Positions 1,349-47,557 of a stretch of DNA of 64,000 bases are shown here, piece by piece. Each line of letters begins with the position of its first letter. Within the stretch, counting starts at the first letter, position 1. This DNA is from Octopus bimaculoides. Taxonomy: Eukaryota. Below the pieces are notes generated by a model. That model did no database searches, was not told the DNA's origin, and saw nothing but the letters and a program-made list of their open reading frames with translations. Position numbers and translations under genes: made by a program. The stretch covers positions 25,906,223-25,970,222 of the forward strand of contig NC_069006.1 in NCBI RefSeq assembly GCF_001194135.2, given 5' to 3'.

Positions 1349-1631
1349 AAGAGTCATTCGACTCTGTTCAAGACGAAAGTGTCAGTCTGCGCAGCCTCAA
1401 AAAATATGGCTGCAACCAGCGACCTTTGACATGTCCTCCGCAGATGCACCAATGCTCAAACAGTAGTCTGCAGCCAATCGGTTTCGGTCACCACAGCTTG
1501 CCCCGACGCCAGAATAACATGGCAAGCAACTCGCAGACCGACCTTTGCAGTTTATGTGGCTTTAGTATTCGCGATGATCGGGTTTCTATCAAAGGTGTGG
1601 TTTACCATAAGGCGTGCTTCAAGTGCACTCG
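1349..1631 (+). CDS. Exon of a LIM-domain protein (zinc finger 1 and first ligand of finger 2)
   Basis: Long polypyrimidine tract + CAG acceptor (1346-1348); open frame ending ...MASNSQTDLCSLCGFSIRDDRVSIKGVVYHKACFKCTR = C-x2-C-x16-H-x2-C-x2-C; donor CG|GTAAGT at 1632 (phase 2); CpG-rich relative to flanks. In-frame ATGs at 1444 and 1519 (AACATGG, strong context), so the 5' part may be UTR. Confidence 0.88.
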
Positions 1632-1739
1632 GTAAGTTACAGAATTCAAAATCATACATTCTTCTCTGGCTTGCTAATGTTTATACATGTTAGAATACAC
1701 AGATCAATGATAGAAAATGGAATTACCAATTTTATTGTA

Positions 1740-1858
1740 TCTAGGGAGAGTCATTGTCTTTTAGTGCCTCATTAATTTAGCATAAGTAAACGAGTAGAAA
1801 TCGGACTGGTGAGTGTGTTAAGTTATTAAGGCACTAAAAGAGAATGACTCTCCCCAGA
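1740..1858. mobile_element. Short foldback MITE-like element
   Basis: Inverted repeats 1744-1769 (GGGAGAGTCATTGTCTTTTAGTGCCT) and 1829-1854, 25/26 identical, with imperfect extension inward. Confidence 0.8.
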
Positions 1859-2246
1859 CTCAATAAAATGTGCTTCAACACACAAATTCACATAAAGAAT
1901 CTTGCAAACCAAATACAAAAGGAATTACCAATATTCTTTATTTAAAATCACTGCAATTGTTTCGACATCTTTTTTATATCTTTAGTTCATTGGTGAGATG
2001 TTCTGTAAGCATTATCTTACAGCCAAGGTGTAAAATGCACCTGTTCAGGTGATTGTTGAAATAAGTCCATTGTTAGATTTTCTTGCCATCTCATTCACTG
2101 TGATAGTGCATGTCCAAAGTGATGTGTCATTTTGTCATTTTCAGCAGTTTACAGAATATGTATGTGTTTGTGTGTGTGTACATATATTTGTGTTCATGTA
2201 TTTATTGCTTACTGCCTGCTCCCTTTGCCTATGATTGCTTCTAGAA

Positions 2247-2438
2247 GTGCTCGTGTGGTGCCATGTAAAAGCATCCAGCACACTCTGTAAAGTGGTGGGC
2301 ATGTTAGGAAGGGCATCCAACCAAAGAAACCATACCAAATTAGACTGGAACTTGGTCAGCTTTCCAACTTGCCAGCTCTGGTCAGACCATCCAACCCATA
2401 CCAGCATAGACAACAGACGTTAAATGATGATGATGATG
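2247..2438 (+). mobile_element. SINE-like repeat, family C 3' part with (TGA)n tail
   Basis: AGGAAGGGCATCCA...CCAACCCAT(A/G)CCAGCAT...GACGTTAAATGATGATG; related copies at 11030, 17925, 18181, 44131, 53463. Confidence 0.75.
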
Positions 2439-2603
2439 CACATCAAAGGTGATGACAGTGTCGATCTGAGGCATTCATCCTCTTCCACTCGGCCAATTCT
2501 CTGCTTCTGTTTCCATTGAAATTTCTGTAATTCATTGGATGTCAGGAATTTATTGTTTGATTTATTACTTTGAGGAGGAAGTTTCTCATTCTGGTGCTAT
2601 TGT

Positions 2604-2821
2604 AATAATCTTTTCTACTCAAGGCACAAGGCCAGAAATTTTAGGGGCAGGGGCCAGTCGATTAGATTTACCCCAGTACACAGCTGGTATTTAATTTATT
2701 GTCCCTGAAAGGATGAAAGGCAAAGTCGACCTCAGCAGAATATGAACTCAGAATGTAAAGACAGACGAAATACCGCTAAGCATTTCGCCCGACGTGCTAA
2801 CGTTTCTGCCAGCCCACAGCC
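2604..2821 (-). mobile_element. tRNA-derived SINE, family D, near full length
   Basis: Reverse complement has A-box-like TGGCAGAAACGTT and B-box-like GAGTTCATATTC; closely matches the + copy at 42526-42738. Confidence 0.85.
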
Positions 2822-3066
2822 TTGATGGTATTGCAGTAATATATTCTTTTCTACTCTAGGGGTTGGGTAGGAAAAGCTGGGAGAGGTATTGCTTGTGTTG
2901 GTAATGGAGGGATTCTTTCTCCAGTTGAAGGGTAGATTGTTTGATGTTTGGGTACAGAGTACAGTATTGTATGGTGGCAGAACATAATCAATGAATACAG
3001 GAATAAAGGGGACATAATCACCAGGATATGTAAACTTAGCGTGCATGAACGACCGAGCAGAAATGG

Positions 3067-3101
<35 letters not shown>

Positions 3102-44295: not shown

Positions 44296-45501
44296 TTTTG
44301 AAATATACATAAATATAAAGAGAGAGAGAGAGGGGGGGAGAGAGAGAGAAAGAGAGAGATAACAATATATATACTTGGTAATGTGTAACACACAAAGCTT
44401 TTAGTTCTTGAGTCATTTTTGTAACTTTTCTGTCAATTAAATTATATATATACATATGTGTGTGTGTGTGCGTGTGTATGTATGTATGTATAGGGAGACA
44501 GAGAATTGTAGTGTATATGCCTTTCTGTATGTTTAAGTGTATGAGTGTGAAGAATGTAATGAGTATAGAAAGAGAGAGAGAGAGAGAGGGGGGGGAGGAG
44601 AGATGAAAAGGCTGTGCCCAGTCACTTTAGCTGCTCAATGTAGCAATGAAAATATGTCAGGAGAAAACAAGGAAATATCTATAAAATAAGAAGCAGATGA
44701 TTCAATCTCAATTATTGGCTGCTGTAGTCATCAATAGTGATCGAACAGGCATTCATTGAATCTGATGTCTTTTCATGTAAAACGGACCACAGATGACCAG
44801 AGATACTCAACAATGCAATCAATGAGGAAACGTGTGAGGCGAATGGGGGGGCGGTAGGGTGTTACAGTAGCAGATCCAACAGTCACCAGTTGAAAGAAAT
44901 GGTTCTGTGTTCAGTTCCAAGTAGAGGTCACAGAACAAAGTACTTCTAAGTTTTACATTTATATATTTTTTTATATTATACATTAATTTTTAGATATGCA
45001 TCAAAGCTATATACATACATATGTGTGTGTGTGTATACATATATATATATATATACATACATACATATATATACACACACATATATGTATATGTAAGTAT
45101 ATGTATATATGTATGAATGTGTGTGTGTGTGTATGTATATATATGCGTACATACATGTGCATGTATGTATTTACATATATGTATGTGCGTGTGTGTAAAG
45201 GATATGTGAATTTGAGTTCCAGGCATAGCCTCCAAGATTTTCTGCATTCTGTTACTGATAGCTTTATTTGCTTCAAGATCCAATGTTCCAAAGAATTATT
45301 TTACANNNNNNNNNNCATATGCATACGTATTTGTATGTATGTATATATACATATATATACATATATAAAGTATATGTGTGTGTGTGTAACTATATGTATG
45401 TATATAAAGTTATATATGTGCATATACATATATGTGTATGTATTCTGCATGTGTGTTTATATATATATGTAGATATGTATGTATATATATGTAATTATAT
45501 A

Positions 45502-45534
<33 letters not shown>

Positions 45535-45593
45535 GCATATGTTTGTGTATTAGTCATGTGAGCGTATATTTCTGTGTGATTGTGTGTGTTTGT

Positions 45594-45629
<36 letters not shown>

Positions 45630-45779
45630 ATGGCCACACCCCCACACACACCCATATTTAATTATATGCATATATACACACCACAGTGGAATCCTAGGCC
45701 TTTACTTTACTGATAATGCCGCACTGAGACAAAAGAGCGTAGAATGGTGGAGGGGAGGGGCTGAGAGAGAGCGAGAGGG

Positions 45780-46420
45780 GTGGGGGTTAGTTGTTGTTGA
45801 ATGTTAATGGAAAACAGCAGGTGTGTGGGGGTGGGCGGGCTATTCTCTTTAATCATTTCATAATCATTTCGAGTTGTTGCATTCTCAGTTGTTGTTCTTG
45901 TTGCTCTTGTTGTTGTGTGCTGCTATTTACTGCTGCATCTGCTGCTGCTGCAGCAACAACTAGCGTCTCTGCTGCTGCTATTCCATTCTTTCTGCTGCTG
46001 CCATTGCCAAACCGTTTATCTTAATGGTCAATGAGTCTTTCGAAGGATTTCAACCGAACGTGTCTCTTAAGTAGCTGCAGATTAGGCATTGCAGTTTTTC
46101 CAAACAGAACAGGAGGGCAGAGGGTGGTGGGGAAGGAGGGATGCACCCATTCATAGCCCGGCACCATGTTGCTTCCAGCAGCAACAGCAGCACTACGAGT
46201 TCCCTCATCTAAGCTATCTGCTTGCTACACAACACTGCACATTGATTGAGCAGCTGGTGGCGGAGGCGGCAGCGGCACTGTTGCTGATGCCGACGACACT
46301 GGTGCTGCTGTAGAAGGCAGTGCAATGACGGAATCTTCCGAAGCGACACCGGCAGGCGCAAATACAAGCACGTGCTTTCTCACGGAGGGAGACATGCAAA
46401 CTCCGTATTAACTCCAGTCA
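45780..46420 (+). promoter_or_regulatory. CpG-rich, promoter/5'-leader-like region (candidate internal promoter)
   Basis: About 18 CpGs in 46000-46420 by manual count, while neighbouring SINEs show CpG decay; GC box GTGGGCGGGC at 45831-45840; Inr-like TCATTT (45853, 45864) and TCAGTT (45885-45890); lies 0.8-1.4 kb upstream of the candidate first coding exon at 47254. Confidence 0.5.
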
Positions 46421-47253
46421 AAGCTGCACAGAACCACATTCCCTTACACTCACAGACACACAAACACACATTCTTTCACAGAATCAATGGAAACCGACTG
46501 TAAACTTTGCCTCACACATGCCATATACACTTTTAGCACATAAATATCAACAGTTCCATTTGTCAGGGTCCCTCTGCTGTCTTTACCGTTTCCTTTCCTA
46601 CCAGAACTATTGCGATTGTTGCTAGAAAAATCAATACAAATTTTACTTGCTCTCTCTGCTTTTCTGTTTTACTTTCCAAATATTATTTCTATCATTATTT
46701 TTATAATTCTTCTTCTTATCACCACCACCACCACCACCACCACCAATCTTTATCTTCCTTATCATTATTATTGTTGTTGTTGTTTGCGTTATTAAATTGT
46801 TTTTTTGCTCACAGTTTTATTTGTGTTGTTATTGTTTTTCTAATAATCTCTCCACCCACCCCCTACTCCAACCCACACACCCTGCTTTCCCCCCTACCCT
46901 GCAACTCCCCTCCTCTCCTTTCTCTTTTTCGATTTTTTCCCCCCTTATTCCTACCATTTATTTATGCATCTCTTCAATCATTTGTTGCTTTCTGGGAATA
47001 CAGTCGGGTATATTTCGATGTGGAACTGAACCAGAGATAACCACCAAACCATTCTCGCAGACTTGTTTGTTTGTGCTGAGTCGCGCCACACCAATGTACA
47101 CACACCTATATATCTAAACACACACACATGCGTACAATGTGCATACACTTGCATAGTTGAAGAGAGTCACATGTGCATACACACACACACACTCGCACAC
47201 CTGCAGAGTTAGCCTCCTACGCACACACAGTATCAGCAAAAACCGAAAGCGGC

Positions 47254-47375
47254 ATGTTTGGTTCACATCTTGGTCGAAGCCCAAAAACCCATAAGCAACT
47301 AATGGCTTCCCCAAGGAAACACCAGAGGTGGAAAGCCTGCCTCTCGTTCCCTGTTAATAAGTATTCAAATGGAAG
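47254..47375 (+). CDS. Candidate alternative first coding exon (downstream promoter isoform)
   Basis: GGCATG at 47254; 40 open codons MFGSHLGRSPKTHKQLMASPRKHQRWKACLSFPVNKYSNG+AG; perfect AAG|GTAAGT donor at 47376 in phase 2, same phase as the microexon end; non-repetitive sequence amid microsatellites. No homology evidence. Confidence 0.55.
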
Positions 47376-47557
47376 GTAAGTTTAAATTCAACCTCTTTCA
47401 TTTCTGTTTGCTTTCTTCCATTCATTATGCATTCTTACTTGAGAGAACATGTGTCTAAGTTTATACGAGCCTGTGCGTGCGTGTATATTTAAGTATATTT
47501 ATTTATCTGTTTGTATATCTATCTTTCTACACATCTATCAATCAATCAGTCAGTCTC

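What the first reader, a model, noticed from the sequence alone, without database searches (positions are those of the whole stretch)
1349..47381. Series of phase-2 alternative N-termini that keep, halve or drop one LIM domain
Seen: four short non-repetitive exon-like segments on + all end in phase 2 with strong donors (1631 CG|GTAAGT, 9978 GG|GTAAGT, 35300 AG|GTAAGG, 47375 AG|GTAAGT). I found only five GGTAAGT sites by eye (584, 1631, 9978, 16448, 47375), and three close an ATG-initiated frame in phase 2. Established: LIM domains need two tandem zinc fingers. Inference: promoter choice would give a full-LIM protein, a protein whose finger 1 is replaced by a 28-aa peptide (half-LIM), and a protein starting downstream of six of the eight zinc ligands. 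Promoter-driven dismantling of a single LIM domain would be an unusual isoform switch. Gene identity is unknown; LASP/EPLIN/MICAL-type and invertebrate tensin-like proteins are candidates to test, not calls.
Basis: partly seen in the sequence, partly recalled or inferred. Interest (0 to 1): 0.75.

Follow-up and report, generated by a model that had tools for sequence, protein, structure and literature searches.

The report
Octopus Rap1GAP gene: swappable LIM-domain starts
The window holds the front part of an octopus Rap1GAP1 gene, a regulator of the small GTPase Rap1, whose LIM zinc-finger domain is split over exons that all join in the same reading phase, so alternative first exons can give proteins with a whole, a partial or almost no LIM domain; this layout is already annotated in many other molluscs, so it is a tidy but ordinary case.

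Summary
The sequence observation holds.

The gene is an octopus rap1 GTPase-activating protein 1 (LIM + GoLoco + Rap-GAP), not LASP, EPLIN, MICAL or tensin.
- **1349-1631** is a real exon but an internal one. It matches residues 89-183 of an Octopus vulgaris protein at 94/95, so ATG 1519 is an internal Met.
- **35268-35300** is the real 33-nt mini-exon, CDAPLTLRSY.
- **9896-9978** is very probably a real alternative first coding exon. Cuttlefish has an ATG exon of the same 27 codons + 2 nt, phase and GTAAGTAA donor in the same intron. Scallop, ark clam, oyster, limpet and chiton isoforms splice a related M-x-R-K-Y exon onto the mini-exon.
- **47302-47375** is plausible. It shares a W-x2-C-[LI]-[ST]-F motif, at the same distance from the junction, with a gastropod N-terminal exon.

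The full / partial / no-LIM series is therefore supported by comparison, though no octopus RNA was available. The "half-LIM" keeps only 3 of 8 zinc ligands. Vertebrate LIMK2b is a precedent, so novelty is modest.

The parts
1349..1631 (+). Internal coding exon of Rap1GAP1. It has a phase-1 acceptor (ttctttccag|AA) and a phase-2 donor (CG|GTAAGT). It encodes ...EESFDSVQDES...QRPLTCPPQ...MASNSQTDLCSLCGFSIRDDRVSIKGVVYHKACFKCT(R), which is LIM zinc ligands 1-5.
   Evidence: tblastn against O. vulgaris CAI9741327.1 (P0270), residues 89-183, gives 94/95 identity. Pfam LIM E = 2.3e-8. The frame is open from the acceptor. Cuttlefish and squid orthologues are 75-79% identical over the whole exon, including the part upstream of the Met.
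9896..9978 (+). Alternative first coding exon: MSRKYFVNYPQTGVLSDSLRYHSGQKD + GG|GTAAGT, which is 27 codons + 2 nt in phase 2. There is an in-frame TAA 7 codons upstream of the ATG. It is predicted to splice to the mini-exon, giving an N-terminus that keeps 3 of 8 LIM ligands.
   Evidence: The Sepia pharaonis locus L001 has ATG..MAQKYSVNCPDNELYDQVLCCYTVSKS + CG|GTAAGTAA. This is the same length, phase and donor, lies 23 kb downstream of the LIM exon, and is 44/83 nt identical without indels. A profile of the chiton and bivalve first exons that splice to the mini-exon ranks this ORF first of 2880 (E = 0.068), with Met aligned to Met. Related exons occur in scallop, ark clam, oyster, limpet and chiton isoforms.
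35268..35300 (+). 33-nt mini-exon (c)TGT GAT GCT CCT CTC ACT CTA AGA AGT TAC AG, encoding CDAPLTLRSY. It is phase 2 in and phase 2 out and carries LIM ligand 6. Skipping it keeps the frame.
   Evidence: It matches P0270 residues 184-193 at 10/10. It has a strong acceptor, tttttttttgttttacag|. The motif CD..L.L[KR][SN]Y is conserved across molluscs, annelid, nemerteans and brachiopod.
47254..47375 (+). Candidate alternative exon ending AG|GTAAGT in phase 2. In-frame ATGs lie at 47254 (MFGSHLGRSPKTHKQL...) and 47302 (MASPRKHQRWKACLSFPVNKYSNG). It is predicted to splice to the downstream exon RKHTMDGQLYCEPH, which lies outside the window, giving a protein with only LIM ligands 7-8.
   Evidence: A profile of the gastropod exon (...[KR]W.SCI[ST]F..|RKQ; Lymnaea, Physella, Biomphalaria X7, Haliotis X5) ranks ORF 47161-47376 first of 2880 (E = 0.094). 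The Haliotis peptide alone also ranks it first (E = 0.049). The motif sits at the same distance from the junction. No cephalopod counterpart could be retrieved.

Best explanation
The window is about 64 kb from the 5' part of a very large octopus Rap1GAP1 gene, whose architecture is LIM, GoLoco, Rap-GAP dimerisation domain and Rap-GAP catalytic domain.

The single LIM domain is encoded by three exons:
- 1349-1631 carries ligands 1-5.
- The 33-nt mini-exon 35268-35300 carries ligand 6.
- A downstream exon beyond the window, RKHTMDGQLYCEPH, carries ligands 7-8.

Every junction in this zone is phase 2. Any first exon that ends in phase 2 can therefore be joined in frame to the mini-exon or to the downstream exon.

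Exon 9896-9978 is an ancient alternative first coding exon with its own ATG. It joins the mini-exon and swaps LIM finger 1 plus the first Cys of finger 2 for a 28-residue peptide. Exon 47302-47375 probably joins the downstream exon and removes all but the last two ligands.

Alternative promoters would thus change only the N-terminal module, most likely a targeting or partner-binding module. The GoLoco motif and the Rap-GAP catalytic core stay constant.

Shown: gene identity, the two LIM exons, the phases, and conservation of the 9978 exon.
Inferred: use of both extra exons in octopus, their promoters, and the functional consequence.
For: - Gene identity: the exons match O. vulgaris P0270. The Owenia orthologue P0036 has Pfam LIM, GoLoco, Rap-GAP_dimer and Rap_GAP. 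P0270 has the same families on record.
- The LIM + RapGAP architecture is seen in annelid, chiton, nemertean, gastropod, bivalve and Trichuris proteins.
- Phase-2 junctions were read directly from the sequence.
- RefSeq isoforms of Biomphalaria, Haliotis, Patella, Liolophura, Magallana, Crassostrea, Ostrea, Pecten and Ylistrum fall into three classes: full LIM, alternative exon joined to the mini-exon, and alternative exon joined to the RK..M[DE]GQLYC exon. Lingula also splices an alternative N-terminus onto the mini-exon.
- O. sinensis X1-X5 and O. vulgaris isoforms already show several LIM-less N-termini joined to RKHTMDGQLYC.
- The 9978 exon is conserved in Sepia with identical length, phase and donor. 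It is the only one of 37 GTAAG sites in that 54-kb locus with a phase-2 ATG ORF of 20-35 codons. It is the top hit there both for the octopus peptide and for the non-cephalopod profile.
- The 47375 exon is the top hit of the gastropod profile.
Against: - No transcript, junction or 5'-end data for octopus could be examined.
- Neither N-terminus is among the eight O. sinensis and O. vulgaris isoforms in the cluster, nor among the listed cuttlefish and squid transcript-derived proteins.
- The octopus 9978 exon has lost the Cys-Cys pair kept in Sepia, limpet and bivalves. Octopus-Sepia identity is spread evenly over the three codon positions (14, 15 and 14 of 27), so there is little sign of amino-acid constraint beyond the first 10 residues.
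- Support for 47375 rests on a short motif with E of about 0.05-0.1. Scores of that size also arise by chance: oyster peptides hit ORF 22803-22946 at E = 0.067, and that ORF has no in-frame ATG before the matched stretch and no GTRAG donor.
- 10 kb upstream of the Argonauta RKHT exon holds no such exon.
Confidence: 0.75

Rival explanations
1. Only the two LIM exons (1349-1631 and 35268-35300) are real. The 9978 and 47375 segments are chance ATG open frames that happen to end at strong donor-like sites inside huge introns.
For: The background rate of ATG open frames of at least 20 codons in a given phase at GTAAG sites is 15-25%. Neither N-terminus is annotated in O. sinensis or O. vulgaris. 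Profile E-values are only 0.07-0.09, and similar scores arise by chance.
Against: For 9978, the Sepia counterpart has the same length, phase, donor and position and is 53% identical at the nucleotide level in an otherwise unalignable intron. There is also the M-x-R-K-Y family in bivalves, limpet and chiton. For 47375, it is the top-ranked ORF of 2880 for an independently defined gastropod exon, with the motif in register with the splice junction.
Confidence: 0.08
2. The 9978 exon is real and conserved, but 47302-47375 is a chance ORF. The octopus LIM-less isoforms come only from the first exons already annotated (MSLEDKYL..., MPNIEQLATKQ), which lie outside this window.
For: The annotated LIM-less first exons are not in the window. 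No cephalopod counterpart of 47375 was found. The similarity to gastropods covers only about 17 residues.
Against: The W-x2-C-[LI]-[ST]-F match has two rare residues in register and lies 8 residues before the junction in both lineages. The ORF was specified before the comparison was made.
Confidence: 0.25
3. The extra exons are transcribed, but they act as non-coding or regulatory 5' exons (uORF-like or NMD-triggering) rather than as sources of distinct protein N-termini.
For: The octopus 9978 peptide has lost the conserved Cys pair and evolves fast. O. sinensis X4 has four transcript accessions whose protein starts only at MDGQLYC, so non-coding 5' exons do exist in this gene.
Against: ATG, frame, exact length and phase have been retained between octopus and cuttlefish. 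Homologous exons are annotated as coding in many molluscs. If inserted after the LIM exon, the 9978 exon would read out of frame to a stop, which fits a first-exon role with its own ATG.
Confidence: 0.1

Closest known systems
rap1 GTPase-activating protein 1 of Octopus vulgaris and O. sinensis (CAI9741327.1; XP_029651435 and related isoforms)
   Same: The two LIM exons of the window match CAI9741327.1 at 94/95 and 10/10. Both have the downstream RKHTMDGQLYCEPH exon, GoLoco motif and Rap-GAP core, and multiple alternative N-termini joined in phase 2.
   Different: The annotated isoforms seen here do not include the 9978 or 47375 N-termini. O. sinensis RefSeq isoforms X1-X5 lack the LIM isoform altogether. 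The O. vulgaris 1108-aa model carries a foreign C-terminal tail.
Mollusc Rap1GAP1 isoforms that splice an alternative first exon onto the mini-exon, e.g. Pecten maximus X4, Ylistrum balloti X5, Tegillarca KUTeg_002519, Magallana gigas X6, Ostrea edulis X24, Patella vulgata X4, Liolophura sinensis X4
   Same: The first exon is 26-37 residues and ends in phase 2 directly before CD..L.L[KR]SY. The N-terminal motif is M-[SAP]-[RK]-[KS]-Y-[FEY]-[VI]: MSRKYEV in Ylistrum, MSRKYFV in octopus.
   Different: Bivalves, limpet and cuttlefish have a Cys-Cys or C-x2-C-W motif 6-7 residues before the mini-exon Cys. Octopus (R-Y-H) and chiton X4 have no Cys there.
Vertebrate LIMK2a / LIMK2b
   Same: [quoted passage not shown] This is conserved between mouse and human (PMC5223434; Nomoto 1999 as cited in PMC8834001).
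   Different: It is a different gene family (a kinase with two LIM domains). Here a single LIM domain sits on a Rap GAP, and there are three states rather than two.
MICAL1 LIM domain (PDB 2co8)
   Same: It is the best solved-structure match to the window's LIM sequence, E = 7e-6, aligning CxxC...H..CF.C..C.
   Different: MICAL has monooxygenase and CH domains. No such domains belong to this gene, whose remainder is GoLoco + Rap-GAP.

Membership tests
LIM domain (Pfam PF00412) | Two contiguous zinc fingers with the pattern C-x2-C-x16-23-H-x2-C-x2-C-x2-C-x16-21-C-x2-(C/H/D) | tested here: met
   The spliced window peptide hits Pfam LIM at E = 2.3e-8, profile positions 1-39 of 58. Six ligands are in the window: C-x2-C-x17-H-x2-C-x2-C in 1349-1631 and C in 35268-35300. 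The last C-x2-H is in the orthologue's next exon (YCEPH), giving C-x19-C-x2-H.
Rap1GAP1 (Rap/Ran-GAP, PF02145 + PF21022 + GoLoco PF02188) | Rap-GAP catalytic domain with dimerisation domain and GoLoco motif in the same protein | tested here: met
   These domains are not in the window itself. The window exons are 94/95 and 10/10 identical to O. vulgaris P0270, which has LIM, GoLoco, Rap-GAP_dimer and Rap_GAP on record. The Owenia orthologue P0036 scores Rap_GAP 1.6e-64, Rap-GAP_dimer 9.6e-39, GoLoco 3.6e-9 and LIM 3.6e-8.
   Full-length orthologues carry only LIM, GoLoco, Rap-GAP_dimer and Rap_GAP. The only resemblance is that the LIM sequence is nearest to the MICAL1 LIM among solved structures.
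Alternative-first-exon isoform series (promoter-driven N-terminal swap, LIMK2a/2b type) | Each variant exon has its own start codon and a phase-compatible donor, and lies upstream of the shared acceptor | tested here: met
   For 9896-9978: ATG with an in-frame stop 7 codons upstream, and a phase-2 donor matching the phase-2 mini-exon acceptor. For 47302-47375: ATG and a phase-2 donor. Homologous exons are annotated as first coding exons in other molluscs.
Alternative-first-exon isoform series (promoter-driven N-terminal swap, LIMK2a/2b type) | Independent transcription start sites and observed splice junctions from each first exon | not testable with these tools
   No RNA-seq, CAGE or cDNA for octopus is reachable. 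The orthologous genes are too long for DNA retrieval: 670 kb, 202 kb and 164 kb.
Half-LIM / single zinc finger as in FHL proteins | Four zinc ligands forming one complete finger | tested here: not met
   The octopus 9978 isoform would retain only C (mini-exon) and C-x2-H (next exon). The alternative peptide has no Cys and one His, 6 residues before the mini-exon Cys. Sepia, limpet and bivalve versions do offer a Cys pair 6-7 residues upstream. Zinc binding is untested.

The most novel reading that the evidence does not exclude
Lophotrochozoan Rap1GAP1 carries an ancient three-state LIM switch, dating to at least the last common ancestor of molluscs. In its middle state the alternative first exon originally supplied a replacement Cys pair (CC-x6-7-C...C-x2-H). 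That pair would convert the remnant of LIM finger 2 into a different, self-sufficient zinc finger. Octopus (and chiton X4) then lost this Cys pair, so in octopus the middle state became a zinc-free N-terminus. The switch would retarget a Rap1 GAP between cellular sites depending on the promoter used.
Probability: 0.2. Interest if true: 0.55.

Novelty: new member of a known kind. Interest (0 to 1): 0.35.

Why it matters
Rap1 GAPs control adhesion, polarity and synaptic signalling, and where they act is set by their N-termini. The data show that in molluscs and other lophotrochozoans Rap1GAP1 carries an N-terminal LIM domain. No paper in the searched library combined 'Rap1GAP', 'LIM domain' and 'GoLoco'. 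The gene layout lets promoters choose between an intact, a mutilated and an almost absent LIM domain.

For octopus genome annotation, the practical gain is one well-supported and one plausible unannotated first coding exon, and the correction that the LIM exon is internal.

For protein science, the conserved partial-LIM exon offers a natural experiment on what a LIM fragment can still do. It has a Cys pair in cuttlefish, limpet and bivalves and none in octopus. None of this overturns current understanding, since alternative first exons that trim a LIM domain are known from LIMK2.

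Tried and rejected
- A word-indexed homologue search with the 48-aa LIM peptide found nothing. That index holds only cluster representatives, and the octopus representative lacks the LIM exon.
- A third homologue search with a chimeric alt4 + alt2 + common query returned only two uninformative hits.
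- The next LIM exon (C-x2-H) was sought in the window by pattern and by tblastn and is not there. The annotated octopus first exons MSLEDKYL... and MPNIEQLATKQ are also absent.
- A C-x2-C-W exon of the bivalve or gastropod type was sought in the window. Only low-complexity hits appeared.
The Physella locus is cut by a contig end. The Haliotis X5 protein is not on record.
- Argonauta DNA 10 kb upstream of the RKHT exon holds no alt4-like exon.
- Exact-product look-ups of the genomic ORFs at 47254 and 1285 found nothing.
- ORF 22803-22946, the top hit for oyster peptides at E = 0.067, was rejected as chance. It has no in-frame ATG before the matched stretch and no GTRAG donor.
- A gastropod-type SQSCRNFRD upstream exon was sought and not found.
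- The GGTAAGT site at 584 cannot supply a coding first exon for the LIM exon. There is a stop codon in the required phase-1 frame, and the ATG|GT reading is out of frame. The site at 16448 lies in microsatellite-like sequence.
- Rfam and tRNA scans found nothing. No other gene-like ORF was seen on either strand.

Full report
**1. Observation**

- Segment 1 runs from a strong acceptor (cttctttccttctttccag|AA at 1348|1349) to ACT CG|GTAAGT, so the exon is 1349-1631.
- Segment 2 is ATG 9896 to 9978: 27 codons + GG, then GTAAGT.
- Segment 3 is 35268-35300: 33 nt, with acceptor tttttttttgttttacag| and donor AG|GTAAGG.
- Segment 4 ends at 47375 (AG|GTAAGT), with in-frame ATGs at 47302 and 47254.

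GGTAAGT occurs five times on +, at exactly the positions listed, and once on -. The count argument is weak taken alone. About 15-25% of GTAAG-type sites on either strand have an ATG open frame of at least 20 codons in any given phase. Two extra hits among four sites therefore has P of about 0.1-0.25.

The window has 25 N runs totalling 7313 N. None touches a segment. The order and frame of segment 1 followed by segment 3 are confirmed by an orthologous protein. The candidate exons are single-copy in the window.

**2. Gene identity**

The spliced peptide is a LIM domain (Pfam E = 2.3e-8). Its nearest solved structure is the MICAL1 LIM.

An exhaustive HMMER search found two cephalopod fragments that are 75-79% identical over the whole of segment 1. 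It also found an 834-aa Owenia protein with a single N-terminal LIM. That protein has LIM, GoLoco, Rap-GAP dimerisation and Rap-GAP domains.

Its homologues are named rap1 GTPase-activating protein 1. They carry the LIM domain in annelid, chiton, nemerteans, gastropods, bivalves and Trichuris. None of the arthropod, echinoderm or amphioxus proteins in the list carries it.

The octopus cluster contains O. vulgaris CAI9741327.1. It reads ...CYEHKLQ|EESFDSVQDES...KACFKCTR|CDAPLTLRSY|RKHTMDGQLYCEPHF... The window matches it at 94/95 and 10/10. The window is therefore an Octopus species' Rap1GAP1 locus. The gene spans about 670 kb in the O. vulgaris annotation.

**3. Segment 1 is internal**

- Its frame is open from the acceptor.
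- The part upstream of Met-1519 is conserved in cuttlefish and squid, and QRP[LM]TCPPQ is also conserved in a more distant protein.
- Orthologues continue upstream with about 88 residues, MPSSH[VI]DGGG....
- In Sepia there is instead a short MGTYKN first exon, seen spliced to the LIM exon in an assembled transcript.
- A transcript-derived protein that seemed to start at the equivalent Met does so only because of a one-base frameshift in the contig.

'MASNSQ...' is therefore not an N-terminus in any evidence seen here.

**4. Ligand map**

- Segment 1 holds ligands 1-5: C-x2-C-x17-H-x2-C-x2-C.
- The mini-exon starts with ligand 6.
- Ligands 7-8 (C-x2-H in YCEPH) lie in the next exon, which is not in the window.

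All three junctions are phase 2, and the mini-exon is 33 nt. Any phase-2 first exon can therefore join either downstream exon in frame. A protein starting from 9896 keeps 3 of 8 ligands, not a full finger. One starting from 47302 keeps 2.

**5. The 9978 exon**

Many mollusc RefSeq isoforms, and Lingula, splice an alternative first exon directly onto the mini-exon. One family begins M-[SAP]-[RK]-[KS]-Y-[FEY]-[VI]:
- Ylistrum MSRKYEVRDHSKYWKCLCCW...
- Tegillarca MARKYEIKQH...
- oysters MPRKGKYEIEDY...
- Patella ...KRKHYFEKK...SCCNFTKER
- chiton MPKSYYFVESPP...
- octopus MSRKYFVNYPQ...

A profile built only from the chiton and bivalve peptides ranks the octopus ORF first of 2880 six-frame ORFs (E = 0.068), with Met aligned to Met.

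The stronger evidence comes from the Sepia pharaonis locus. It has, 23 kb downstream of its LIM exon, ATG-MAQKYSVNCPDNELYDQVLCCYTVSKS + CG|GTAAGTAA. This is again 27 codons + 2 nt in phase 2, with an in-frame stop 5 codons upstream of the ATG. It is 44/83 nt identical to octopus without any indel, while the flanks do not align. It is the only one of 37 GTAAG sites in that locus with a phase-2 ATG ORF of 20-35 codons. It is the top hit there for both the octopus peptide and the non-cephalopod profile.

I take this exon as real and ancient.

Caveats:
- Octopus has lost the Cys pair that lies 6-7 residues before the mini-exon Cys in Sepia, Patella and bivalves.
- Identity is even across codon positions.
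- Single bivalve peptides do not find the exon.
- It is not among the annotated octopus isoforms.

**6. The 47375 exon**

Gastropod isoforms have an N-terminus ending ...[KR]W[TN]SCI[ST]F-x7,8-|RKQ..M[DE]. These are Lymnaea, Physella, Biomphalaria X7 and Haliotis X5. Octopus reads ...QRWKACLSFPVNKYSNG|, which puts the same 8 residues between F and the junction codon as in Lymnaea.

The gastropod profile ranks ORF 47161-47376 first of 2880 (E = 0.094). The Haliotis peptide alone does the same (E = 0.049).

E-values of that size also occur by chance in this window. The weight therefore rests on two points: the ORF was specified in advance, and the motif is in register with the splice site. No cephalopod counterpart could be checked. 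I rate this exon as probable (about 0.7), and it is unclear whether it is a first or an internal exon.

**7. Mechanism and comparison**

The best reading is promoter or first-exon choice that changes the N-terminal module of a Rap1 GAP while keeping GoLoco and the catalytic core. Octopus already has several annotated LIM-less N-termini joined to the same downstream exon.

[quoted passage not shown] No paper in the library combines Rap1GAP, LIM domain and GoLoco.

The finding is thus a correct and useful annotation-level insight into a known kind of isoform switch. It comes with one well-supported and one plausible unannotated exon. It is not a new type of mechanism.

**8. Limits**

No expression data were available. 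Intron lengths are uncertain because of gaps. The functional consequence (zinc binding, localisation) is inferred.

Noticed in passing
outside the window; proteins P0164, P0165, P0170, P0191, P0199, P0249: The exon carrying the last two LIM ligands (M[DE]GQL[YF]C-x2-H) is kept at the start of Rap1GAP1 in centipedes, a locust, Priapulus, a brittle star and sea urchins. The representative proteins of those animals show no LIM domain. A LIM remnant therefore seems constitutive in many bilaterians, which hints that the LIM-RapGAP fusion is older than Lophotrochozoa.
   Followed up: partly
window 41535-41654, 59890-60069, 63674-63866, 26058-26166, 27647-27737: A short interspersed repeat, reading ...VEDTCPRCHAVGLN.EP... 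in one frame, occurs several times in the window. It also occurs many times in the Argonauta locus L002 at about 80-86% identity, so it is an octopod-wide SINE-like element. ARAGORN finds no tRNA in it.
   Followed up: partly
O. vulgaris protein P0270, residues 970-1108: The 1108-aa O. vulgaris gene model ends in a 139-residue tail (SKESKVRLKISFLIDKY...). This tail replaces the normal C-terminus and has ZBED5/FAM200- and DUF4371-type hits on record. It is probably a transposase-derived exon fused by the annotation, which would also inflate the 670-kb gene range.
   Followed up: partly
window 541-584: There is an exon-like piece between tttag| and ATG|GTAAGT, 765 nt upstream of the LIM exon. 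It cannot code into the LIM exon, because there is a stop in the required phase and the ATG reading is out of frame. It could be a non-coding 5' exon or nothing.
   Followed up: partly
L003 (Logan SRR20545810 contig), bases 60-90: The assembled cuttlefish or squid transcript has one extra A in an A-run. This splits the ORF into a 46-aa and an 817-aa product, creating a false 'MATSPSDQ' N-terminus in the protein collection.
   Followed up: yes
window 1-240: The first 240 bases read, in one frame, like the C-terminal tail of a retroelement ORF (...IVGALG.I.K...KIALLGTAHILRKTLS). This is probably a decayed LINE fragment.
   Followed up: no
window 660-1030, 11300-12000, 26290-27000, 32890-33120 and many others: The introns are dominated by tri-nucleotide and di-nucleotide microsatellites (CAC/CAA/CAT, TG/CA, TATG) and by assembly gaps, which make up 11% of the window. 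Most long 'ORFs' in either strand are translations of these repeats.
   Followed up: no
window 22803-22946: ORF ...APRKFPSEAQVWSRFCLWKTSSF... is the best window hit for the oyster partial-LIM exon peptides (E = 0.067). It has no in-frame ATG before the matched stretch and no GTRAG donor nearby, so it was judged to be chance. It is a useful calibration of how weak such E-values are.
   Followed up: yes
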